Source of the DNA: Malacoraja senta
Taxonomy: Eukaryota
Length of the DNA: 64,000 bases
Direction of reading: 5' to 3'
NCBI GenBank assembly: GCA_038087875.1
Contig: CM075981.1
Span: forward strand, 2,728,001 to 2,792,000
The translations under genes were made by a program, and so were the position numbers. This document shows, one piece after another, positions 680 through 63,887 of the stretch (position 1 is its first letter; the number at the start of each line of letters is the position of its first letter). The notes under the pieces are model-generated. The model had not been told where the DNA came from, did not search any database, and was given only the letters and a program-made list of their open reading frames with translations.

Positions 680-845
680 CTTTAATAGCATGGTATCTAC
701 TCCGGCAAATAGACAAGGATTTATCAATTCTGTGGTTAGTTATGTGAGGAAATACCAGTTTGATGGTTTTGATCTGGATTGGGAATATCCAGGTTCCGCT
801 GGAAATCCACCAGAAAATAAACAGCGTTTCACAGCATTGGTAAAG
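680..845 (+). CDS. chia: Chitinase gene 1 catalytic exon (GH18 active site)
   Basis: cccccAG|C..AAG|GTaaat, 166 bp; [55 protein letters not shown] with intact DxxDxDxE. Confidence 0.96.
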
Positions 846-10299: not shown

Positions 10300-10424
10300 G
10301 AAATGAAAGCTGCTTTTGTAAAGGAAGGAAAAACATCAGGAAAACCTAGATTACTGATTACAGCTGCTGTGGCTGCTGCTAAAGGCACCATTGATGTTAG
10401 TTATGAAGTGGCTAAAATTGCTGA
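10300..10424 (+). CDS. chia: Chitinase gene 1 exon
   Basis: cccccAG|GAA..GA|GTaagt, 125 bp; EMKAAFVKEGKTSGKPRLLITAAVAAAKGTIDVSYEVAKIAE. Confidence 0.94.
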
Positions 10425-18997: not shown

Positions 18998-19121
18998 ACA
19001 ACTGGACCTTATACATGTGATGAGTTATGATTACACCGGTGGCTGGAACACTTTCACTGGACACCATAGTCCTTTGTTTCGAGGAAGCAAAGATCGTTTC
19101 GACTTTGTGTACTACAATACA
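18998..19121 (+). CDS. chia: Chitinase gene 1 exon
   Basis: tttAG|A..ACA|GTatgt, 124 bp; QLDLIHVMSYDYTGGWNTFTGHHSPLFRGSKDRFDFVYYNT. Confidence 0.95.
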
Positions 19122-19248: not shown

Positions 19249-19431
19249 GCATATACTGTTAATTATTATCGAACCAAAGGTGCACCCAGAAGTAAGCTGA
19301 TAGTTGGAATTCCAACTTATGGACGAAGCTTTAAACTTAGTTCTAGTGATACAAAGGTTGGTGCTCCAGCATCTGGTCCTGGACCGAAAGGCGCAATTAC
19401 GAAAGCAGAAGGTATCCTGGCAAATTATGAG
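19249..19431 (+). CDS. chia: Chitinase gene 1 exon
   Basis: ttgcAG|GCA..GAG|GTgatt, 183 bp; [61 protein letters not shown]. Confidence 0.95.
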
Positions 19432-30900: not shown

Positions 30901-31690
30901 ATGGCAGGCAGTGATTAGTGGGGTGCCGCAAGGCTCGGTGCTGGGACCTCAGTTGTTTACAATATTAACGATTTAGATGAGGGAATTAAATGTAACATTT
31001 CTGAATTTGCGGATGACACAAAACTGGGTGGCAGTGTGAGCTGCGAAGAGGATGCTGTTCCTTTGTCGAAGAAGGACAGTAGATATAATCCAGGATATTA
31101 TAGACCGGGGGCAAGAAGCTGTTGGAGAGGATTCTTTGGGATCGCATTTGCTTGTATTTCGAAGAGAGTGGAATTATTAGGGACAGTTGCCATTTTATAA
31201 ACCTCTACAACGTCACTTTTCAGTCCCCTAAGCTCCCGTGAAAATAGACAACATGTCCAGCCTCTCTTTATAACTCAAACCATCCAAACCTGGTAAAACT
31301 CTCGTAAGTCTTTTTTAATACCCTTTCCAGTTTAGTGGCATCCTTCATATACCAGGGTAACCAAAACTGTGATGACCTGGTTTAACCAAATAAACAAGAA
31401 AACCAAAATTTAGGGTATATGAGATTTGAATTACATTAATGCATTCTTTTACAGATATATCCCCTCTGCCTGGCTGGTCTTCATATTGTGACTATTTTTG
31501 GACATTATGTCCCACATGCAACATTATCAGGAAAATATAATGTCACTTGTCTCTTTAATTCATAAATCAGTAGCTATAACAATACATTCCATGTTGATTT
31601 CATCACAAAAGTGACTTCCAGGTCATCTCAAGTAACTTCAGAGGGATTGGCTTGTACGTACTAACAATGCACCACCTTTCCCCTCAACAG

Positions 31691-31807
31691 GTATGTGACT
31701 TTTTGAAAGGAGCAAAAAGATATTGGATTGAAGATCAGAAGGTTCCGTATGCAGTCAAGGGAGATATATGGCTGGGCTATGATGACAAGGAAAGTATTAT
31801 TGCCAAA
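31691..31807 (+). CDS. chia: Chitinase gene 1 exon
   Basis: caacAG|GTA..AAA|GTaaga, 117 bp; VCDFLKGAKRYWIEDQKVPYAVKGDIWLGYDDKESIIAK. Confidence 0.94.
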
Positions 31808-32139
31808 GTAAGATTAATTTATTATGAAACAGTTTTTATGATCTGATATTTATGTTAATTCTAGAAAATATCTTTAATTTGTTGATGAATCAGGTATTTG
31901 CTAGTTTTGAAAATTCTTTGAATATTACTGACAACATGTTGGTTTCCTTGGTAGGCAAGTGGTAAATGAATTGCCTTATGTTGACAAAGATGATCCTGAG
32001 CAGATAGAGAATAAAATCTTTGACACAGGCACTGTTTGTAGGTTCACCTACAAGTCGTCTACTTTTGTAACATTGTTGTTGGTTTTAATCCTGGAACTCC
32101 ATAACTAAAGATACAGTGGTTACAGTTTGGAGAATCTGA

Positions 32140-32390
32140 GTGGAAACAGGCCTTTCAGCCTATCGAGTGCACGCCAACCATCAATCACCCATTCACACTA
32201 GTACCATGTTATTCCACTTTTGCATCCAACACACTGGGCAATTTACAAAGCCAATTAACCTACAAACCTACATGTATTTTTAATGTGAAGGGAATCTGAA
32301 GCATCCAGAGAAAACCCACATGGACATGGGGAGTACGTACAAACTCCGCACAGACAGTACCTGTAGTCTGGATCGAACCCGGGTTTCTGG
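32140..32390 (-). mobile_element. HE1-like SINE
   Basis: CR1-derived tail plus V-domain and tRNA-like region (GGATCGAACCC on + strand). Confidence 0.7.
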
Positions 32391-32394
32391 CCCC

Positions 32395-32810
32395 ATCTTC
32401 TTCTTTCGTGTCCATCATCTATGTTTAAAATATTCGACCAGGCTCTTGCACAGTGGACAGCCTTCTCGTTTGCTACCGCTAGATCTTCTAGGCAGCATTG
32501 TTCACCAAGAAGTGGGCATCTTAGTAGGTGTGGCATGGATTGTACAGATGTTCCACATTCACATTCTGTGTCTGCCACATCTGCATAGTCCCATTTGCTC
32601 ATATTGGTCTTGCATCGGCCCATCCCTGTAAGAAGCCTATTGAGGGACTTCCAGGTCTTCCAGTCACACCTGTGTCCAGATGGTGGCTGTTCCTTGGTTG
32701 GGATTGGCATCTTTATGTGGTGGTGGTTTTCACTGTGTTTCTTTTCCCACAAGGCTGGTCTGGTTGCTTGAGAAGACTGTGACAGTGGCTCTCTGCCACT
32801 GTGCTGCCCT
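32395..32810 (-). mobile_element. RTE-clade LINE 3' fragment
   Basis: WKSLNRLLTGMGRC..CECG..HLLRCP C-terminus with (GAA)n tail. Confidence 0.7.
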
Positions 32811-33189
32811 TGAGTGTTACTATCATTTTTTATATTTCGGATTTACAGCGTATGCAATATTTTTGATTTTCAGTAAATACAACTTATTGAATATGAAACT
32901 AATGAGCAGGAATGCTCCTCGTGATCTCACATTAAAGGATCTCAAGTTCTGCATCGTGTCCTGTAAACCAGAGGGATTTTGATATTTATCAGGACCATTT
33001 ACATTAGCGATGCAATCTTTTAAGAGCGACAGAACTAACTATTTGAACACTGAGTACCTCCATCTTCTTTCGTATCCCTCGTTGCATGTGGAAGTATCTA
33101 TTCAATATATATAGCAAATTTGACAGCATAATTATATTGTTGAGTACCAATCTGGTTCTAAAGTATCTAAAGTTAGTTTATCTTTGTAG

Positions 33190-33325
33190 ATTAAGTGGAC
33201 GAAGAAGCAAGGTTTTGGAGGAGCTTTAGTGTGGACACTTGATTTTGATGATGCACACAACCATTGTAAACAAGGTGTAAGTCCTCTATTGCAAACGGCG
33301 AAGAATGAGCTTTCACACAATTCAG
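33190..33325 (+). CDS. chia: Chitinase gene 1 exon (end of GH18 domain)
   Basis: ttgtAG|ATT..TCAG|GTcggt, 136 bp, phase-1 end; IKWTKKQGFGGALVWTLDFDDAHNHCKQGVSPLLQTAKNELSHNS. Confidence 0.9.
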
Positions 33326-33401
33326 GTCGGTATATAATTTTTGCATCTGAAATTTTTTACAATAATGTGCATTGATAGTTGCATAGAAAGATAGTAGTTT
33401 A

Positions 33402-34845
33402 CTAGACCAAGTGGGACACATTGGGTCCCTGTCACATGGGAGGCCTGGTCCCCAACGCAACCCGTTCCACAAAAGCAATATTCGACCACTCACCCTTAGC
33501 CCCCACGGGAGGCCTGGTCCACCAACGCAACCTGTTCCTCAACGCAATATTCCACCACTCATCCGTTTCCCCAAAGCAATCCGTTCCCCCAATGCAAAAT
33601 TCCACCACTCACCCATAGCCCTCAACTGCGCAGGGGCTGCTCCTTTGCTCCTTATTCACCCTCCCTCATTTTTAAATTTAAAAAAAATGCAATTGCACTT
33701 GCTAGTGCTAGCAGGACTCAGTGTACTAGGAGTTACAGTTCCCCCAATGTAACCCGTTTCCCCAACGCAATATTCCACCACTCACCCATAGCCCCCATCC
33801 CATATCCCCCAGCACTCCCTCCCCCTCCTCTTCACCCTCCCTCTTCTCTCCCGTCTCCTTCTCCAATCCCTCCCTCCCTCTCCTTTCCCCTACCCTCAGT
33901 CACTCCCTACCCTCAGTCTTTCCCACCCACCCTCCATAACCCCTACCCCCTGATCCGTTGGGCCCCGTTCCCCCAACGCAATATTTCACGAACCCGTTTC
34001 CCCAATGCAACCCGTTTCCATCACTCACCCGTTCCCCCAATGCAACCCGTTCCCCCAACGCAATATTCGACCACTCACCCATAGCCCCCATGGGAGGCCT
34101 GGTCCCTCAACGCAACCCGTTCCTCAAAGTAAGATTCGACCACTCACCCGTTTTCCCCCAACGCAGCCCGTTTCCCCAATAGGTCATGGTCACATGCGAG
34201 GTGTGGTCCCCCAACGCAACCCTTCCCCCAATGCAATATTCCACCACTCACCCATAGCCCCTCATCATCCCTCTTTTTAAGCGTTTAAAAAAATGCAAGC
34301 ACTTGCTGCCATGACTTTAAAAACAATTCTAATTCCACTTCCCCAGCCTCCCCCAGCACTTCCAATTCCAATTCCGCTTCCCTTGCCCTCTCCCCCTCCT
34401 GTTTAAGCCCTTGCTGCCAGGACTTTAAAAAAAATCCACTTCCACCCCCTGCCTCTCCCAGCACTCTCTCCCCCTCCTGTTCAGCCTCACTGCCAGGAGT
34501 GTTCTATGATAGGATGAAGTGTTCTATGATTGGAACATTGTTGCAAATGAGATTCCATTGTGGCGTCATAGCTGTAACTGTCAGCACTGAAGTGTTGAAG
34601 TGATTCTTTCTCAAAGTGGGGTTTTGTAAACTTTTAAATGTCAATGACTTGTGAAATATAACATCAATCTGAACGAAACTTGACACAAACGACCACATGA
34701 CAACGGTGAGTAAGGTGGTGCAAAGACGTTAGCGCTATCGTGTACCGTTTTGGCGTAGTTCCAGGATCACATGGGCAAACACGCATAGATAGATAGAAAC
34801 AAGACGAGTGTTTTAGAGATGGATGGCTGGACGGACAGACAGACC
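33402..34845 (-). mobile_element. Non-autonomous Helitron-like element, same family as 7750-8870
   Basis: Minus-strand end GGGAC-N7-GTCCC..CTAG|T at 33402; many internal CCCCAACGCAATATTCCACCACTCACCC-type repeats. Confidence 0.72.
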
Positions 34846-35059
34846 ACAATGATCACAACAGTATCAGCACTCATAAACTCTTGGATATATCCATACATAC
34901 GCTGGCATCATCCCCTCTAGTCTTCTTCCTATGTACCCTTCCATATCTCTACTTTCACTCTCCCCTGAATCTCAGTCTGAAGAAGGGTCTCCACCCAAAA
35001 CGTCACCCATTCCTTCTCTCCAGAGATGCTGCCTGTCCTGCTGTTACTCCAGCATTTTA

Positions 35060-35665
35060 CCCTACACAAGGGACGATTTATAGAGGCCAATTAGCCTGCA
35101 AACCTGCATAATTTTGGAATGTGAGAAGAAACCGGAGCACCCGGAGAAAACCCACGCGGTCACAGAGAGAACGTGCAAACGCTGTTCAGACAGCACCTGT
35201 AGTCTAGGATCAAACCCGGGTCTCTAGCGCTGAAAGGCAGCATAGACATAGAAACATAGAAAATAGGTGCAGGAGTAGGCCATTCGGCCCTTCGAGCCTG
35301 CACCGCCATTCAATATGATCATGGCTGATCATCCAACTCAGTATCCTGTACCTGCTTTCTCTCCATACCTCCTGATCCCTTTAACCACAAGGGCCACATC
35401 TAACTCCCTCTTAAATATAGCCAATGAATGGCCTCAACTACATTCTGTGGCAGAGAATTCCAGAGATTCACCACTCTCTGTGTAAAAAATGTGTTTCTCA
35501 TCTCAGTCCTAAAAGATTTCCCCTTTATCCTTAAACTGTGACCCCCTTGTTCTGGACTCCCCCAACATCGGGAACAATCTTCCTGCATCTAGCCTGTCCA
35601 ACCCCTTAAGAATTTTGTAAGTTTCTATAAGCATTACTACCACTGCATCATTGTGCCACCCCTAA
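35060..35665 (-). mobile_element. HE1-like SINE interrupted by a young CR1 3' fragment (about 35243-35630)
   Basis: SINE resumes at 35631 after the CR1 tail and ORF2 end. Confidence 0.75.
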
Positions 35666-35787
35666 TTTGCAGTTAGAGTTATCAGATTTAAAAAATGAAA
35701 AATATGTTTTATAGTAAGATAACCTCATTTTTTTAAATGTAAAATAGTGTTGTTAGTGATCAAATTAATTAATTTTTCTGTGCTAAG

Positions 35788-35933
35788 GCGGCGGCGATGA
35801 AGATGGGACAACGAATTCGTCGAAGGACCCTGATGTGGAAAACATGTCTGTGTTGGGGATTTCATTGAAAGTGCATATATTACTCATTGGACTGTTGGTG
35901 AACAAAATATCAAACTTAATGCTGCAGAGATAA
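35788..35933 (+). CDS. Chitinase gene 1 putative terminal exon (linker plus hydrophobic tail, no CBM14)
   Basis: aatttttctgtgctAAG| acceptor, phase-1 compatible with 33325; (G)GGDEDGTTNSSKDPDVENMSVLGISLKVHILLIGLLVNKISNLMLQR* with TAA at 35931-35933; not recognisable as a repeat; no homology support. Confidence 0.62.
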
Positions 35934-36942
35934 ATCAGAAAAAGTGACATACCCTATTTAAAAATGTGGTATAAACCATAAAATAACCACAAAAATAACC
36001 ATTTAAAATACTGAATACTGCTTTGTTAGGTTCTGAGGACTATGAAAATTAGGAGAATGCAAAACAAGCCCAATGTGAATAATATAAATGATATTTAAAT
36101 CTCAGAGTCATCGAGTCATATGGCATGGAACTGGACTTTTCGGCCTATCTGCCCATGTAACCAGAATGCCCTATCCAAGCTAGTGGCATTTGTCTGCTCC
36201 TGGCCCACATCCTTCTAAACCTTTCCTATCCATGTACCTATCTAATGAGCCTTTTCCATATACCTACCAGTCTTTTTGTGAAAAATTAGCCCCTCAGGTT
36301 CCTATTGAATTGTTCCCTCTCACCTTAAATCTATGCCTTTTAGTTCTTGATTCACCTACTTTGGGTAAAAGATTCACCCTATCTTGTTTACTCATGATTA
36401 TGTACACCTCTAAAAGATTGCCACAGTCTCTAGATAACAATCTTCATGGTCTAAGATACCACATATTTTGATGTAATCTGCAAACATAGTAATCATGCCT
36501 TGAATATTCCCATCCAAACCTTGAAATATAAAATAAAGGCCATATAAAATACACCTACTGCTTTGCCCTCATCAACCTATGTGATTAATTCTTCAAAGAA
36601 CTCAACTCATTTTGTGAGACATGATTTCCCACGCACAAAACCATGTGGATTATCCCAAATCAATCTCTGTTTTTCAAGTGTATGTATTTCTTAATACTCT
36701 GAATCCTCTCCAGTAACGGCTATAAGATGTTAGGCCAACTCAGGTTTTTCTTTGTAGCTCTTCTTAAATAGGGGCCCAACATAAGGCCCTCTGCAGTCTT
36801 GTGGCACCTCACCTATGTCTAATGATGATTGATATAACTCAGCCTGCACTCTAGCTTCCCAGTGTCATTGGATATACTTGATCAGGCCCAGGAAACTCAT
36901 CTGCTTTCATGCACAGATGACTATTTGGTTGCTGAGGAGCCT

Positions 36943-38000
36943 AATAAGCGAGCTTGGTATTCCGACTGCGCATGCTCAGGTCAAAGGTCACTATGCATAA
37001 ACAGCCCTGGAAAGCAGTGGATCTTCATTTCTTCTGTTTTTCCCAGCTTTGATTCTTCTGGGTAAGAAAATATTGCCTTCAAACTATGAAATAGTTTATT
37101 TATTGTTCCTTTGTTAAAAGCCAAGATTATTTTGTTGTTTTTATTGCTTTATTATGCTTTGGTTAGTGAGCGAGATCGTACACGTCCGTGATCGGTGTCG
37201 GGCCCGTGTCTGTAAGTTGCTGTTGGGCCATCCCCATCCCCTCCAGGGTGTCTCGTCCTTGTCCGGGGGGCGGCCGGAGGTGTTTGGCCGGGCCAGGCTT
37301 GCAGCCAGCGCGGGGAGGAGGCCGAGTTGCTGAAGCGCTTTGTGTGTATGGCTGGTACTCAGCTTTCGCTGCCGCCGGGGGGATTGGCTGGCAGTCCCTG
37401 GCCCGTCGGGATACGGAGTTGGGCTGGAGTTGGTGCTTCTCTGCGCTGGCTGTGACCGACGACACCAGCAGCCCCAGGCCCACAGCCAGCGCAGAAGCGC
37501 CAACCCCACTCCCCGACGGGCCGCGGACCGCCAGCCAACCCCCCTGGCGCCGGCAAAAGCCGAGCACCAGCCATCAACGGGGATATACACAAAGCGCTGC
37601 AACAACTCGGCCTCTTCCCCGCGCTGGCTGCAAGCCCGACTCGGCCCAGCCCGATACCTCCGGCTGCCCCCGGACAGGGACGAGCCACCCTGGAGGGGAC
37701 GGGGACGGCCTCAGAGCAACTCAACAGACCAGGGCCCGACACCGACCACAGACGAGCATGATCTTGCTCATTCACCAAAGCATAATAAAGCAATAAATAC
37801 GACAAAATAATCTTAGCTTTTAACAAAGGAACAATAAATAAAAGATTTCATAGTTTGAAAGCAATATTCTCTTACCTAGAAGAATCAGTTGGAAATAACA
37901 TGAGAAAACAAGGTCCACTGCTCCACTGCATTCCAGGGCTGTTTATGCATAGTGACCTTTGACCTGGGCATGCGCAGTCGGAATACCGAACTCGCTTATT
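36943..38000. mobile_element. Foldback (MITE-like) element, almost entirely an imperfect inverted repeat
   Basis: Termini AATAAGCGAG..CTCGCTTATT; arms of about 500 bp meet near 37455-37480; CpG-rich core; no clear TSD. Confidence 0.85.
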
Positions 38001-40816
38001 CTCTCCCTGTTTACCATTTTCCCCTTAATATACATTAAATCTCATTGTTTTCTCAAACGTATGTATTGCATGCCACCTTTTGCCCTTCGTGCATATGTTC
38101 TTTAATTCCCTATACCCCTCGGGATAGACTTGATGCCAGTTATCTATACCTGACCCATGCCTCCTTTTTTTCTGAACAGTCATAGAGTGATACAGTGTGG
38201 AAACAGGCCCTTCGGCCCAACTTGCCCACAATGGCCAACAATGTCCCAGCTACACACGTCCCACTTGCCTGCAATTGGTCCATATCCCTCAAAACCTGTC
38301 CTATCCATATACCTGTCTAACTGTTTCTGAACCTATGGGATAGTCCCAGTCTCAACTACCTCCTCTGACAGCTTGTTCCATACACCCACCACCCTTTGTG
38401 TGAAAGCGTTACCACTTGGATTCCGATTAAATCATTTCCCCTTCACCCTATGTCCTCTGGTCCTCGATTCCCCTACTCTGGGCAAGAGACTCTGTGCATC
38501 TACCCTTAATGCTACCCACCAGAGCTATCTCCTGGCCTCTTGTTGCCCTTCTGATCTTTTTCAGTTTACTCCTTAGTTCCTGAAATTCCTCCAGGGATGC
38601 ACTTGATCCCAGCTGCCTATACCTATCGAGAAAAAAGTTTGTTGATTGGCTTTTTCATTAAACATTTTGTGAAATAGAAATCTACAAACCAAACTATTTA
38701 ACCAAAGGGTAATTTGAATAGTATTACTGTGAACCACAATATAAATGTGTTTGGAAAGTGGTTTGGAAATCTCCACCTTACTGGACTTTATACTTTTGAA
38801 ATGTCCTTAAATCGGCTAGCATTTTCAGAAAGTTACTATACTCTGCAACAAATATATTTGATAAATGTGCTCTTAATAATCACCATCAGCCAGTTGACAA
38901 AATGCTCCGAAATCATTTATTCCTCTCAACATTCTTAGGAATTATAATCTTGTCCAGTCATGAAGTCCAATCAGCCAAGGACATATAGGAGCAGAATTAG
39001 GCCAATCATGGCTGATCTATCTCTCCCTCCTAACCCCATTTTCTCCACATCCACTCTATCCAGGCCTTTCACTATTTGGTAAGTTTCAATGAGGTTCCCC
39101 CTCATAGGTATAAGGTAAGTGGGGAAAGATTTAATAGTAACCTAAGGGGCAACCTTTTCCCCACACAGGGTGATGCGTATATGAACTGCCAATAGATAAC
39201 AACATTTAAAAGACATTTGGACATATACATGGATAGGAATGGTTTAGAGGGATATAGGCCAAATGCGGAGAGGTGGGACATATAGATGGGGCATTTTTGT
39301 CAGCGTGAGCAAGTTGGTTCGAAGGACCTATCTGTACAAGACTGACAAAACTAAGCCAAAGGGTGGATTCAAATAAACATTTGCAAGGATTTTCATGTGG
39401 TAAATAGTGTGTTTTATTACATTTATTAATGCTGCAAAAAAAAATTTAAATTGTGGTTATTGATATTATACTGTGTCTTTGATGACCGGGAACTTTTCCT
39501 CCATTTTACCGAATTTGTACTTCTGGTATGATATTTAAAAATATTGATTCTGTTCAATTTCATCATATTCAAATTGATTTAATAAATGTATCCTTTAAAA
39601 AATGTAAATGTAACATTAAAATGCTCAATTTAAAGACTGCTTGCCACATCTGCACTGTTAGTTGAAGGGAGACACAAGGAATTGCAGATACTGGAATTTT
39701 GAGCAAAACACAAAGTGTTGGCGGGTCAAGCAGCATCAGGGAATGGACAGACTGGAGTAAACTTTCCAGCAGATTTGGGAAGGACGGCCGGACAAAGGCG
39801 AGGCAGGGCTGCCTATGAGAGCGGCTCCTGTGGAGGATCGGAAGGTTACTTTGCACAGAATTGCTCCAAGCGTCCACAAAGCTTCACTGAAAACTCGACC
39901 CCGCTCTGGGGGAAACCGCCCCACCCAGACGCTGCCATCCAGGAAGCTGCTGGTCGCATCCGCACCGTCTCCCCTCTGGCCGGCCACGGGGATGTAGGCC
40001 AGTTGCCGTGAGAGAAACCAATTTGGGTTTGAGTTATTGAAAAGTTCTGCAAATATACTGGGTTTTCTTGTTCTGTGGCACAAAAAAAATACGAGATGGG
40101 ATGTTAAGCAAGAGACCAATGCCAACTGCTAATCCTCCCTATAATATGGTAATTGTTTGCCCCTGACATCAATTTTATCCCCTTCCCCAACAACACCATC
40201 TTGGCAATCACAGGCTCCACCACTATTGCCTAGATCTCCAGTGTGTATTCTGTTCATGCGCAACACAGGATTCAGTAATACCTGATATTTTAAGACTTGT
40301 TGGTGCTCATTTTGTTTATGGCATGTCCACAACCTAAATGGTGGTTGGTTGATTCCACACTGATCAATTATATGTCACTCAAGGCACCAATCAATTTCTA
40401 GACAACACCTTCCTGTCTCTACCACTGGATTAATTGGGTAGATCCAGTCATTTTCAGATTCTCAAGAATGAAATCCAGTTGGGGAATATTGGGAGTGGGC
40501 AAGGAAGCACACTTCTCTCCCTCCCTTCGCCTTGAAATAATTCTATGACACATAAAACAGTTGTTTCAGCCCTCAAAATATTTTCTGGAAACAATAGAAT
40601 ATAGATTTGGAATAATAAGTCTTGGTTTCATAAAAGATGATTCATCAAAGGTGGAAGATTCAGTTTGGTGGTGTTTTTTCAGATAATCTCAGTGACCACA
40701 AACAAATTATATTCCAATAGTATATAATTTTTAACCACTGAAGCTAGCCTTCTTAACCAAAATTGTGTGATTAAAATTAGTTAGGATGGCGCCAAATATT
40801 ATTTTACTGCTTGAAG

Positions 40817-40870
40817 GAATGACAAGTTGGAGACACTGCTGACACTTGGAGAGGATTTTGGTTCTAAAAG
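40817..40870 (+). pseudogene. Isolated degenerate chitinase exon (copy of the KTLLAVGGWNFG exon)
   Basis: ttgAAG|G..AAAAG|GTaagt, 54 bp; NDKLETLLTLGEDFGSK versus NSELKTLLAVGGWNFGSV at 63659-63715; same phase 2-2, one codon shorter. Confidence 0.65.
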
Positions 40871-41206
40871 GTAAGTATGTTTATGCATTTTCATAAAGGA
40901 ATATGTTAAAACACAGATACTAACTGGCAGCTTGGTTTAATGCATTAATGAATTGTACACCTCCAATAGCTTTTGGGACTTCTGCACTAAGATAGACACA
41001 AAGTGCTGGAGTAACTCAGTGGGTCAGGCAGCTTCTCTGGAAAGGGAATGGGTGACGTTTCGGGTCGAGACCTTTCTTCAGACTGAGTCAGAGGAGAGGT
41101 TCCCTAGAGATGCTGCCTGACCCGCTTAGTTATTCCCGTACTTTGTACCTATCTATGTTCTCCAGAGATGCCGCCTGACCCGCTGAGTTACTCCAGCACT
41201 ATGGAT

Positions 41207-47373: not shown

Positions 47374-47809
47374 TTACGTCGCAATACTTCCAATGTGCAG
47401 TTCTCATCCTTGTATTTATGAATCCTTTCATGATTTTATCCTTCCAATCTTTTCTATTCTTTGTCAACCCTATCAACACCATGCTCCTTTGATTCTAGGC
47501 TTTTTTACATCCATCCTTTGCCCAACTACAGGCCTGGAGCCTTTAGATATCTGTCCTTATATTTCCTTTTAAAACCATGCACCCTACTACTTCCTCCCAA
47601 ATCCCGTGTCTACTCTTTCCTTTCGAGAACCTTTTCAATCCTAATTTATTGGGCACTTTCATTTACCCTGTTTGCTTCTTTGACCAATCTTTCTATGAAA
47701 TGACAGTACATTTTTTAAATTTTAATTGTAATATACAAATTAGTTGATTGTCTAATACTATTCTTTAATGAAAATGATAAAATAAGCTTTTTGACTTTTT
47801 TTTCCCCAG

Positions 47810-47842
47810 TGGGATTCTTTATATTTTTGCAACTACAATTGG
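47810..47842 (+). CDS. chia: Chitinase gene 2 exon 2 (signal peptide)
   Basis: tttttccccAG|TG..TTGG|GTaagt, 33 bp; (V)GFFIFLQLQL(G), compare CHIA LQLG. Confidence 0.85.
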
Positions 47843-48059
47843 GTAAGTCATAGTATTGTCATCAAATGCCAAAGCTACTTCTAGTCAGCATATTTCAGCA
47901 ATCACTTTCATTAAAGTATTGTAAATTATAATAATTATTATTAAACTTTTAGGTCCAGATAAAAGACGACATTACATAGAATACATTGCATATAAAAATA
48001 CCATAAAATACATATAAAAGCTTAGTAAATTACTTATGAGCATCATAAATTATACACAA

Positions 48060-48850: not shown

Positions 48851-49098
48851 ATAGAAATTGTGTTTCAAGTGTGTATTTATTTATTTTTTAATTAATGTTT
48901 TTAAACTACTTAAAAAATGTTCATTTCTACAACAAACCAGTGACATTTAGAAGGTTGCAATTCTTTGTTGCTACGAATTTGGACTTATTAAAACATAACA
49001 AATAATTACATTTAGGCATGATTAAGTTTTACACTGAATACTTATCCTGAGATAAATAACACGTTTTATCATAACATGTTTTATTTTGTATATTGCAG

Positions 49099-49303
49099 GC
49101 AGTACTTATATCATTGTTTGTTATTTCACAAACTGGGCACAATACAGAACTGGAATTGGTCGGTTTGCAGCTAAGGATATTAATCCTTTTTTGTGCACCC
49201 ATTTGATTTATGCTTTTGCTGAAATAACTGAAGATTATAAAATTTTTATCCAAGACCCAAAGAAAGAAGATTCTTTAAAAGTATTTAACGATCTCAAGTC
49301 TAG
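49099..49303 (+). CDS. chia: Chitinase gene 2 exon 3
   Basis: ttgcAG|GC..TAG|GTgagt, 205 bp; STYIIVCYFTNWAQYRTGIGRFAAKDINPFLCTHLIYAFAEITEDYKIFIQDPKKEDSLKVFNDLKSR. Confidence 0.96.
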
Positions 49304-49589
49304 GTGAGTGGGAATGCGTTCCTCAGCAGTTTACTTATAACCCAAACAAATTCTTAATCTATAGTTCTTTCTCATGTTAAATGTTTTCATCCTTGAAAGC
49401 AGTTGGACTTTTGAGAAGCAGTTAGTGAAGCCTATGGAAACACAAGAGACGACAAATGCTGGAATCTTTATCAAAAAACAAACTACTGAAGGAATTCATT
49501 GGGTCAGGCAGCATCTGTGGAGGGAAATGGACAAACAACATTTCAGGTTGGCTGCCTGTCCCGCTGAGTTCGCCAGCTTTTAGTGTCTA

Positions 49590-63250: not shown

Positions 63251-63658
63251 CAGTGAAGATCTGCAACAATAGAGATTCTCACTGGCAATTCGGTGGGCAT
63301 GACTGACCATCACCATGTTCTTCCATCATCAGCATTGTTGGGTCGGAGGGTGGAGGTCATTAACTGGAATCTTTGCTCGACCAACTACGGCTATAGTGGC
63401 TGGGTATACCATACCATGGAACCTACCTCTGGACTCTTTCCACTATTAATTTTTAAAGTGTTCCTTAAAAACACAAGGCCAAATTTTCTGCCATATCCCC
63501 AGATAATCTCATCATATCTTATCTTAAGGTTATTTTGAAAAGGTGCTTGAATAAGTTTTCCTTTAGACCACTGATACCAATATCTGTTGCCAACATTATG
63601 AAGGTTTACTTCAATTATTTTTTTTTAAAATACATGAATTTGATTTATTTTTTTAAAG

Positions 63659-63715
63659 GAATAGTGAATTGAAGACACTTCTTGCTGTTGGAGGTTGGAA
63701 CTTTGGTTCCGTTCG
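63659..63715 (+). CDS. chia: Chitinase gene 2 exon 4
   Basis: ttttaAAG|G..CG|GTaaga, 57 bp; NSELKTLLAVGGWNFGSVR. Confidence 0.94.
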
Positions 63716-63887
63716 GTAAGAGTTTGTAATGAGGATATATTGGTAAAATATGTACGTGTAACTAATGTAAAATTCCCATCAATAATTACCTGATGCCGTT
63801 TTGCAAGCTATCCACAGTATTCCAAATGAAAAATATAAATGCCACGAGCAATTTTTAAAGTATTACTAAACTGTAAATGAAGGTTTA

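What the first reader, a model, noticed from the sequence alone, without database searches (positions are those of the whole stretch)
33190..35933. Chitinase 1 appears to replace the chitin-binding domain with a GPI-signal-like hydrophobic tail
Seen: the last GH18 exon ends in phase 1 at 33325. The first clearly non-repeat, phase-compatible exon I found downstream (35788-35933) encodes GGGDEDGTTNSSKDPDVENMS-VLGISLKVHILLIGLLV-NKISNLMLQR*. This is a polar linker, small residues (N-M-S) about 30 aa from the end, then a hydrophobic stretch. I found no six-cysteine CBM14 exon before gene 2. Known: vertebrate CHIA and CHIT1 are soluble and put a hinge plus CBM14 after this phase-1 intron, whereas GPI-anchored GH18 chitinases are known mainly from fungi. 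Inference: a catalytically intact, cell-surface-tethered chitinase in a cartilaginous fish. It could act on dietary chitin at an epithelial surface or remodel endogenous chitin. The tail is only moderately hydrophobic and the acceptor is a weaker AAG.
Basis: partly seen in the sequence, partly recalled or inferred. Interest (0 to 1): 0.8.

Follow-up and report, generated by a model that had tools for sequence, protein, structure and literature searches.

The report
Skate chitinase with replaced membrane-anchor tail
This skate chitinase gene really has no chitin-binding domain: it belongs to a shark-and-ray family that normally ends in a short greasy, lipid-anchor-like tail, and in this gene that tail exon was lost and apparently replaced by a stretch of the old 3' untranslated region, so membrane tethering is possible but unproven.

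Summary
The last GH18 exon ends in phase 1 at 33325. The frame at 35788-35933 is open and unique. A CBM14 profile finds nothing in six frames of the window or of six related loci.

Gene 1 is the orthologue of Leucoraja erinacea XP_055510982 and Amblyraja radiata XP_032898116. It sits in an elasmobranch-only clade with no CBM14 (SH-aLRT 100). That clade is sister to a CBM14-bearing elasmobranch clade.

Most clade members end in a roughly 22-residue terminal exon laid out like a GPI signal. This gene does not carry that exon. In sawfish and Rhinoraja the canonical exon is present, and the block matching 35841-36064 lies about 300 nt downstream with a broken frame. In five rajid copies the canonical exon is gone. 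There the block is open for 48 or 59 codons back to a conserved phase-1 AAG acceptor.

Only one of four RefSeq models uses it. The sequencing runs I found were DNA, so no transcript evidence exists.

The tail is an acidic linker, a 17-19-residue hydrophobic stretch and a 10-residue end containing K and R. It could be a weak transmembrane or GPI anchor.

Verdict: partly supported; a new variant of a known kind. The scan has not reported this before.

The parts
680..845 (+). Gene 1 GH18 exon carrying the catalytic motif [11 protein letters not shown]. Earlier exons lie before the window.
   Evidence: Pfam PF00704, E 7e-17. tblastn to P0166 residues 101-164. Splice sites read.
10300..10424 (+). 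Gene 1 GH18 exon
   Evidence: 95% amino-acid identity to P0166 residues 158-200. cccccag acceptor and GTAAGT donor.
18998..19121 (+). Gene 1 GH18 exon (MSYDYTGGW)
   Evidence: Pfam PF00704. 95% identity to P0166 residues 201-241.
19249..19431 (+). Gene 1 GH18 exon
   Evidence: 95% identity to P0166 residues 242-303. Splice sites.
31691..31807 (+). Gene 1 GH18 exon
   Evidence: tblastn to P0166 residues 298-343. caacag acceptor and GTAAGA donor.
33190..33325 (+). Last GH18 exon, with a phase-1 donor G|gtcggt
   Evidence: 93-96% DNA identity to the L. erinacea and A. radiata orthologues.
33326..35787 (+). Last intron, mostly interspersed repeats. No canonical tail exon and no CBM14 exon. Reading through the donor stops after 16 codons, and that frame is not kept in L. 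erinacea.
   Evidence: Repeat tiles and contig depth. Tail-profile scan. CBM14 HMM. A 1-nt indel breaks the read-through frame.
35788..35933 (+). Candidate terminal coding exon. It encodes an acidic linker with an NSS glycosylation site, a hydrophobic stretch, then NKISNLMLQR and a stop.
   Evidence: The frame is open and the AAG acceptor conserved in five rajid copies. The CDS of the L. erinacea 431-aa paralogue ends at the homologous TAA. In sawfish and Rhinoraja the homologous block lies downstream of the canonical exon with a broken frame.
35934..36560 (+). Probable 3' UTR. The first AATAAA or ATTAAA on the + strand after position 32936 is at 36532-36537, inside a stretch 100% identical to L. 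erinacea.
   Evidence: Pattern scan. Conservation profiles against the orthologue and the paralogue.
35746..35747 (+). Alternative upstream TAG acceptor. In phase 1 it would give a different 17-residue ending, hydrophobic and then RRRR.
   Evidence: Read from the sequence. Open in the orthologues but only 8 codons in the paralogues. Its use is untested.
37170..37850 (.). GC-rich inverted-repeat element that the A. radiata RefSeq models use as C-terminal coding sequence. Not a credible exon here.
   Evidence: P0338 residues 486-586 hit both strands at 43-76% identity. Contig depth is roughly 40-480 times the single-copy level.
40817..40870 (+). Orphan degenerate GH18 exon (GGWNFG-type), a relic of a further paralogue
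   Evidence: Sequence read. Window 40795-40887 aligns at 81% to the P0166 exon at L001:14333-14430. A second relic exon lies at L001:48701-48820.
49080..49304 (+). Gene 2 exon (CYFTNW...). Gene 2 is the orthologue of L. erinacea XP_055510984 (P0340) and runs off the window after 63657-63716.
   Evidence: 85% and 95% amino-acid identity to P0340.

Best explanation
Gene 1 is a catalytically intact GH18 chitinase of an elasmobranch-specific clade. That clade lost the hinge and CBM14 exon. In its place it acquired, after the same phase-1 intron, a short terminal exon. That exon encodes about 22 residues laid out like a GPI-attachment signal: a small A/N/D-S-G triplet, a spacer of about 9 residues with a conserved Lys, then 12-13 hydrophobic residues running to the C-terminus.

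In the rajid skates (this window, Amblyraja, Leucoraja) the canonical tail exon of this gene and of its upstream paralogue has been lost. The mRNA most likely now splices from 33325 to the AAG acceptor at 35787 and ends near the AATAAA at 36532. Part of the ancestral 3' UTR has therefore become coding.

The resulting 48-residue ending has three parts. The first is a fast-evolving acidic, glycosylatable linker. The second is a 17-19-residue moderately hydrophobic stretch. The third is a 10-residue end with K and R. The most likely consequence is that the enzyme is held at a membrane, either by a weak single-pass anchor with a tiny cytoplasmic tail or by a GPI anchor attached near N-M-S.

Shown: clade membership, absence of CBM14, loss of the canonical exon, and an open frame with a conserved acceptor in five copies.

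Inferred: that the exon is used (about 0.55-0.6), and that it tethers the protein (about 0.3 overall).
For: Gene structure
- GH18 identity and intact splice sites across six exons.
- No CBM14 in any frame of the window or of the related loci.

Clade
- In the tree, 23 elasmobranch-only sequences without CBM14 form a clade (SH-aLRT 100). It is sister (99) to CBM14-bearing elasmobranch genes. The window groups with L. erinacea P0166 and A. radiata P0338 (99).
- Canonical hydrophobic tails occur in Heptranchias, Heterodontus, Scyliorhinus, Pristiophorus, Pristis, Hemitrygon, Leucoraja and Rhinoraja. They are absent from non-elasmobranch proteins that lack CBM14.
- Where the genomic DNA was read (L. 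erinacea L002 and L003, sawfish L004, Rhinoraja L006), the canonical tail is a separate terminal exon that completes the phase-1 codon after a tag acceptor.

The canonical exon and the block
- The sawfish and Rhinoraja loci carry a canonical exon, with profile scores of 25-26 against a background of 18 or less. The window-like block lies 290-340 nt downstream with a broken frame.
- The rajid loci lack the canonical exon. Their block is open for 48 or 59 codons from a conserved AAG acceptor, and the paralogues differ by an in-frame 12-nt indel.
- The annotated CDS of the L. erinacea upstream paralogue (431 aa) ends exactly at the homologous TAA. Its length fits GH18 plus this exon.

Alternatives and the 3' end
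- The read-through frame after the donor is not conserved.
- No AATAAA or ATTAAA occurs on the + strand between 32936 and 36532, and the one at 36532 lies in a 100% conserved stretch. A canonical poly(A) signal therefore first appears downstream of this exon.

Tail properties
- The best 19-residue Kyte-Doolittle mean of the tail is 2.17.
Against: - No transcript evidence.
- The RefSeq models of the direct orthologues do not use this exon. L. erinacea P0166 ends in an exon 14 kb downstream that has no counterpart in the window. A. radiata P0338 and its upstream neighbour gene appear to end in the same kind of repeat-derived downstream region (established for P0338 only).
- The hydrophobic half is as conserved in Rhinoraja and sawfish, where it is not in frame, as in the rajids. 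The conservation therefore reflects an older non-coding role, and the hydrophobic reading could be fortuitous.
- The AAG acceptor is weak, and a TAG acceptor 40 nt upstream would give another frame.
- The 10 residues with K and R after the hydrophobic core are atypical for GPI signals. K and H inside the core are poor for a transmembrane helix.
- The GH18 exons differ from L. erinacea by 24 non-synonymous and 4 synonymous changes (dN/dS about 1.7, by a rough unrun estimate not distinguishable from 1). The gene may be under relaxed constraint.
Confidence: 0.5

Rival explanations
1. The gene makes a soluble chitinase without CBM14. The 33325 donor is read through, or it joins the upstream TAG acceptor at 35747, the AAG at 35802, or another exon. 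Under this reading the 48-residue tail is not made, or it is a non-functional appendage removed or degraded in the ER.
For: - Three of four RefSeq models of genes with this block end elsewhere.
- The L. erinacea gene-2 orthologue has an annotated read-through isoform, P0153.
- The AAG acceptor is weak, and a TAG acceptor lies 40 nt upstream.
- Conservation of the block does not depend on its being in frame.
Against: - The read-through frame is broken by a 1-nt indel in L. erinacea.
- The alternative RefSeq endings are absent from the window (L. erinacea) or lie in a high-copy inverted repeat (A. radiata).
- The AAG-acceptor frame is open in all five rajid copies with an in-frame indel, and one RefSeq CDS ends at its stop.
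Confidence: 0.3
2. Gene 1 is drifting towards a pseudogene. After it lost its canonical terminal exon it has no proper ending and is little expressed, and the open frame in the former UTR is a leftover without function.
For: - 24 non-synonymous against 4 synonymous differences over 275 GH18 codons versus L. erinacea.
- Gene models of the orthologues are inconsistent.
- Relic exons of a decayed paralogue lie next door.
- No RNA run holding the exon was found.
Against: - All six GH18 exons in the window are intact, with good splice sites and an intact catalytic motif, in three species.
- The exonised frame and its acceptor are kept in both paralogues of two species.
- Exon DNA is more conserved than intron DNA.
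Confidence: 0.15
3. A CBM14 exon exists but was missed, because it is diverged, lies beyond gene 2, or falls in an assembly error.
For: Nothing positive. The only argument is that the sister clade in elasmobranchs has CBM14.
Against: - The CBM14 HMM is negative in six frames of the window and of six related loci from four species, with a working control.
- All 23 clade members lack the Pfam CBM14 domain in their annotation.
Confidence: 0.02

Closest known systems
Vertebrate acidic chitinase (CHIA) and chitotriosidase (CHIT1): GH18 with hinge and CBM14
   Same: The same GH18 fold and catalytic DxxDxDxE motif, the same exon layout, and the same phase-1 intron after the last catalytic exon. The sister clade in elasmobranchs still has CBM14.
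   Different: No hinge or CBM14 exon. A hydrophobic tail stands in its place. CHIA and CHIT1 are secreted, soluble enzymes (established knowledge).
Elasmobranch 'acidic mammalian chitinase-like' / 'chitinase-3-like' RefSeq predictions without CBM14 (e.g. L. erinacea XP_055510989 and XP_055510984, S. torazame P0158, P. pectinata P0170)
   Same: The same clade and the same tandem cluster; gene 2 of the window is one of them. All have a hydrophobic C-terminus after the same intron phase.
   Different: Those proteins end in the canonical exon of about 22 residues. Gene 1 and its rajid paralogue lost it and use a different, downstream-derived exon with a long acidic linker and a polar, basic end. 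Some skate paralogues have lost the catalytic Glu (DWAFP, AWHYP), whereas gene 1 keeps it.
Fungal GPI-anchored GH18 chitinases (e.g. Candida Cht2, Aspergillus ChiA; from general knowledge)
   Same: A GH18 catalytic domain followed by a linker and a C-terminal hydrophobic signal instead of a chitin-binding module. The idea of a surface-tethered chitinase acting on the organism's own chitin.
   Different: Unrelated lineage of GH18, Ser/Thr-rich linkers, and experimentally shown anchoring. Here the resemblance is an analogy only and nothing is shown biochemically.
Exonisation of 3' UTR or terminal-exon replacement giving new C-termini (general phenomenon)
   Same: Loss of one terminal exon, with a new acceptor recruited in formerly non-coding downstream sequence that keeps the old poly(A) region.
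   Different: In this case the new ending again happens to be hydrophobic. Whether that is selection for anchoring or chance in T-rich sequence is open.

Membership tests
Glycoside hydrolase family 18 (PF00704), active chitinase | Sequence match to the GH18 profile and to solved chitinase structures | tested here: met
   Pfam E 7e-17 and 6.5e-9 on two exons. The last exon aligns to CHIT1 and AMCase chains. 80-95% identity per exon to the annotated skate orthologue.
Glycoside hydrolase family 18 (PF00704), active chitinase | Catalytic DxxDxDxE motif with the Glu present | tested here: met
   [11 protein letters not shown] at 680-845. The same motif is present in the orthologues. Enzyme activity itself was not tested.
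CHIA/CHIT1 architecture (GH18 + hinge + CBM14) | A six-cysteine CBM14 (PF01607) exon after the phase-1 intron | tested here: not met
   No tblastn hit. The CBM14 HMM scores E >= 0.27 in six frames of the window and six loci, against a control at 1.4e-20.
Elasmobranch GH18 clade without CBM14, with hydrophobic tail | Phylogenetic placement inside the clade | tested here: met
   Clade support 100. The window groups with P0166 and P0338 at 99 (quick IQ-TREE, SH-aLRT only).
Elasmobranch GH18 clade without CBM14, with hydrophobic tail | Canonical terminal exon of about 22 residues (..SG | LQLxTSxxK + 12-13 hydrophobic residues, then stop) | tested here: not met
The profile scan finds it in sawfish (25.6), Rhinoraja (25.1), L002 and L003.
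GPI-anchored protein | N-terminal secretory signal peptide | tested here: inconclusive
   The first exons lie outside the window. The orthologue P0166 begins with a typical hydrophobic leader before CYFTNW. No predictor was run.
GPI-anchored protein | C-terminal hydrophobic segment that runs to, or nearly to, the C-terminus with no charged tail | tested here: not met
   A hydrophobic core is present (best 10-residue KD mean 2.9). It is followed by NKISNLMLQR, which has two basic residues. The canonical tails of the other clade members do meet this feature.
GPI-anchored protein | Small omega and omega+2 residues about 8-12 residues before the hydrophobic segment | tested here: inconclusive
   N-M-S lies 7 residues before the core in the window and its orthologues, but the paralogues have L-M-G-S. 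This was judged by rule of thumb only.
GPI-anchored protein | Positive call by NetGPI, PredGPI or big-PI; release by PI-PLC | not testable with these tools
   No such predictor was available and no experiment was possible.
Type I single-pass membrane protein | A hydrophobic helix of about 18-21 residues followed by a basic cytoplasmic flank | tested here: inconclusive
   The 19-residue KD mean of 2.17 exceeds the usual 1.6 cut-off, and K and R follow it. However, K and H sit inside the segment.

The most novel reading that the evidence does not exclude
Sharks, rays and skates have a whole clade of GH18 proteins (active chitinases and chi-lectins) that swapped the chitin-binding module for a GPI anchor and sit on cell surfaces. 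They might remodel the animals' own chitin, which is reported in the ampullae of Lorenzini, or act at the gut epithelium. In rajid skates one branch then lost that anchor exon and rebuilt a membrane-holding tail from its own 3' UTR.
Probability: 0.4. Interest if true: 0.7.

Novelty: new variant of a known kind. Interest (0 to 1): 0.55.

Why it matters
All described vertebrate GH18 chitinases and chi-lectins are secreted, soluble proteins. Searches of the held literature found no membrane-anchored vertebrate member.

A conserved anchor-like tail across roughly 400 million years of elasmobranch evolution would place chitin hydrolysis or chitin binding on a cell surface. It would do so in animals that make endogenous chitin: chitin synthase is expressed in the ampullae of Lorenzini of little skate (bioRxiv 10.1101/687301).

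The skate gene in this window adds a clear case of terminal-exon loss followed by apparent exonisation of the old 3' UTR. It also shows that the RefSeq 3' ends of these genes disagree between species and need transcript data.

All of this is testable with standard experiments: 3' RACE, tagged expression and PI-PLC release.

Tried and rejected
- RNA evidence. Both sequencing-run searches with the RNA filter returned only runs of unknown kind. When laid on 31600-37599 their contigs cross exon-intron borders at single-copy depth, so they are whole-genome DNA.
- Representative-library search with the 45-residue last exon. It gave mainly invertebrate multi-domain chitinases and fragments. It was useful only because it yielded P0032.
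- Region-restricted homologue search. It returned 6 proteins and did not find the 431-aa L. erinacea paralogue, so I could not read that protein's sequence directly. Its ending is inferred from the CDS end coordinate, the frame and the length.
- A small HMM of canonical tails against intergenic open frames. No significant hit.
- A 13-residue profile of the canonical tails. Its score of 16-17 lies within the background maxima of other loci (16-18), and a hydrophobic exon scores well by composition. I therefore do not count this as proof of homology with the canonical tail.
- tblastn with short tail peptides at lax thresholds. Noise only.
- The L. erinacea RefSeq tail exon (L001:50773-50886). 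It has no counterpart in the window, because the alignment stops 20 nt before it.
- ESM Atlas feature search with a canonical tail. It gave only weak leads (scores of 0.64 or less), among them C-terminal fragments of fungal glycosidases. Not used as evidence.
- Rfam scan of 35600-37100. Nothing.
- The bacterial promoter and terminator scan is not meaningful for this eukaryotic locus.
- Missed CBM14 exon. Rejected.
Full report
**What is in the window.** Two tandem GH18 genes lie on the + strand.

Gene 1 begins before the window. Its exons are at 680-845 (catalytic motif [11 protein letters not shown]), 10300-10424, 18998-19121, 19249-19431, 31691-31807 and 33190-33325. All have plausible splice sites. 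The last one ends ...TCA G|gtcggt in phase 1, and it aligns to the final helix of solved chitotriosidase and AMCase structures.

Gene 2 starts near 49 kb and runs off the window. A degenerate orphan GH18 exon sits between the genes at 40817-40870.

**The observation.** The segment is unique within the window and single-copy in genomic contigs, whereas most of the intron before it is repeat.

No CBM14 exists here. tblastn with CBM14-bearing relatives finds nothing between the genes. A CBM14 HMM built from 144 vertebrate domains finds nothing in six frames of the window or of the six related loci. Its best score is E 0.27, while a held-out control scores 1.4e-20.

**Which gene this is.** The closest annotated proteins are both in one 90% cluster:
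- L. erinacea XP_055510982 (P0166, 423 aa)
- A. radiata XP_032898116 (P0338)

The L. erinacea locus (L001) is collinear with the window at about 90-93% DNA identity. The A. radiata locus (L005) is about 95% identical over the last GH18 exon and the tail block. The window therefore comes from a rajid skate nearer to Amblyraja.

In L. erinacea four GH18 genes lie in tandem: a 431-aa gene, P0166, P0340/P0153 and P0161. Window gene 1 is the P0166 orthologue and gene 2 the P0340 orthologue.

**The family.** A maximum-likelihood tree of 62 sequences was built (quick search, SH-aLRT support only). It puts 23 elasmobranch-only sequences, none carrying the Pfam CBM14 domain, in one clade (support 100). 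That clade is sister (99) to an elasmobranch clade that keeps CBM14.

Many members end, right after ...SG, in about 22 residues. These comprise a spacer with a conserved Lys and then 12-13 hydrophobic residues up to the stop. Such tails occur in Heptranchias, Heterodontus, Scyliorhinus, Pristiophorus, Pristis, Hemitrygon, Leucoraja and Rhinoraja. Non-elasmobranch GH18 proteins that lack CBM14 stop shortly after the catalytic domain, with no such tail.

Where I could read the DNA, the tail is a separate terminal exon behind a tag acceptor that completes the phase-1 codon.

The layout is that of a GPI-attachment signal (rule of thumb from general knowledge): a small A/N/D-S-G triplet, a spacer, and a short hydrophobic end with no cytoplasmic residues. 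No predictor was available.

The catalytic Glu is kept in the gene-1 lineage and in sharks. It is lost in the P0340 (DWAFP) and P0161 (AWHYP) lineages, so the clade holds both enzymes and chi-lectins.

In sawfish (L004) the canonical exon of P0170 lies at 34198-34275. In Rhinoraja longicauda (L006) one lies near 34946-35051. A held-out profile scores them 25.6 and 25.1, against background maxima of 18 or less.

In both species the sequence homologous to window 35841-36064 lies 290-340 nt downstream of that exon (71-77% identity). There the skate reading frame is broken. Sawfish has a 2-nt insertion. Rhinoraja has a 19-nt gap and no AG at the acceptor position. The frame is open for only 21 and 28 codons respectively.

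In the rajid loci no canonical exon can be found. These are the window, and the orthologue and upstream paralogue in each of A. radiata and L. erinacea. In all five copies the block is open for 48 or 59 codons back to a phase-1 AAG acceptor at the same position. The paralogues differ by an in-frame 12-nt indel in the linker.

The simplest reading has three steps:
1. The block was 3' UTR of the ancestral gene.
2. The canonical exon was lost in the rajid ancestor.
3. A new acceptor turned part of the UTR into coding sequence.

Consistent with a 3' end here, the + strand has no AATAAA or ATTAAA between 32936 and 36532. The AATAAA at 36532 sits in a stretch that is 100% identical to L. erinacea and 90% or more identical to the paralogue.

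**How strong is the case that the exon is used?**

In favour:
- The open frame and the acceptor are kept in five copies.
- The L. erinacea 431-aa paralogue's annotated CDS ends exactly at the homologous TAA in this frame. Its length equals the GH18 part plus this exon, give or take one residue.
- The read-through frame after the donor is not conserved.

Against:
- The RefSeq models of the direct orthologues end elsewhere.
- The L. erinacea model uses an exon 14 kb downstream whose sequence is missing from the window.
- The A. radiata orthologue model uses a GC-rich inverted repeat, equivalent to window 37170-37850, that is high-copy in the genome. The CDS of its upstream neighbour gene ends a similar distance beyond its own copy of the block.
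- The acceptor is a weak AAG, and a TAG 40 nt upstream would give a different short ending.
- No RNA data could be obtained, because the runs returned were genomic DNA.

I put use of the exon at about 0.55-0.6.

**Selection.** Against L. erinacea the hydrophobic half has 0 non-synonymous and 2 synonymous changes in 27 codons. The linker has 7 and 1.

The hydrophobic half is just as conserved in Rhinoraja and sawfish, where it is out of frame. The conservation is therefore inherited from a non-coding role and does not show selection on the peptide.

The GH18 exons show 24 non-synonymous and 4 synonymous differences over 275 codons (dN/dS about 1.7). By a rough, unrun estimate this is not distinguishable from 1. 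It suggests relaxed or diversifying selection.

**What the tail could do.** The ending has three parts:
- an acidic linker of about 20 residues with an NSS glycosylation site;
- a 17-19-residue stretch with a Kyte-Doolittle mean of 2.17, including one K and one H;
- NKISNLMLQR.

Acidic residues before and basic residues after a hydrophobic stretch fit a type I single-pass anchor, but the stretch is marginal for a helix. For a GPI signal, N-M-S seven residues before the core is acceptable. However, the 10-residue basic end is atypical, and the site is not kept in the paralogues.

I therefore consider membrane tethering the most likely function if the exon is used, without being able to choose the anchor type. 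Overall probability of tethering is about 0.3. For the canonical tails of the other clade members a GPI anchor is the best reading, at about 0.6.

**Comparison and novelty.** The protein works like a CHIA/CHIT1-type chitinase in its catalytic part but fails the CBM14 test. It belongs to the elasmobranch clade without CBM14 but fails the canonical-tail test. The nearest functional analogy is the fungal GPI-anchored GH18 chitinases.

Literature searches found no report of a membrane-anchored vertebrate GH18. The tails are visible in public RefSeq predictions but appear undescribed. Endogenous chitin and chitin synthase expression in the ampullae of Lorenzini of little skate give a possible context.

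**Verdict.** This is a new variant of a known kind, of moderate interest. It rests on comparative sequence analysis alone and needs transcript and cell-biological tests. The scan has not reported this chitinase tail before. The only related note on this window is the orphan exon (s1-175119).

Noticed in passing
window 40817-40870; L001:48701-48820: A degenerate GGWNFG-type GH18 exon with a good gtaagt donor lies between the two genes. L. erinacea has a further relic exon (47% identity to P0166 residues 161-200) in the same interval. Both look like remains of a decayed third paralogue.
   Followed up: partly
window 36430-36980: This block is 95-100% identical to L. erinacea and 85-94% identical to the upstream paralogue, more conserved than the coding exons. 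It contains the first canonical AATAAA (36532). It is probably distal 3' UTR and poly(A) region, but the conservation continues beyond that. There is no Rfam match.
   Followed up: partly
window 37170-37850: A GC-rich inverted repeat has long open frames on both strands and a contig depth roughly 40-480 times the single-copy level. The A. radiata RefSeq model XP_032898116 translates the equivalent element as its C-terminus, so that model is probably wrong at both ends. It also carries an odd 90-residue N-terminal extension.
   Followed up: partly
window 680-33325 vs L001: The GH18 exons differ from L. erinacea by 24 non-synonymous but only 4 synonymous changes. The synonymous divergence (0.02) is well below intron divergence (about 0.07-0.1). 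Possible causes are gene conversion among paralogues or an unusual constraint.
   Followed up: no
L002 (P0340 gene), L003 (P0161 gene): The skate paralogues of gene 2 and the next gene have lost the catalytic Glu (DWAFP, AWHYP) but keep the canonical hydrophobic tail. They would be tail-bearing chi-lectins.
   Followed up: partly
L002:31868-31912: L. erinacea isoform X2 (P0153) is simply read-through of the last donor. The 14 intron-encoded residues are again hydrophobic.
   Followed up: yes
window 47719-47850: The open frame matching the gene-2 signal-peptide exon (..VGFFIFLQLQLG) shows no ATG at the position of the L. erinacea start. The gene-2 start in this species was not resolved.
   Followed up: no
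Runs listed under the RNA filter with kind '?' turned out to be whole-genome DNA of this species and of related skates.
   Followed up: yes
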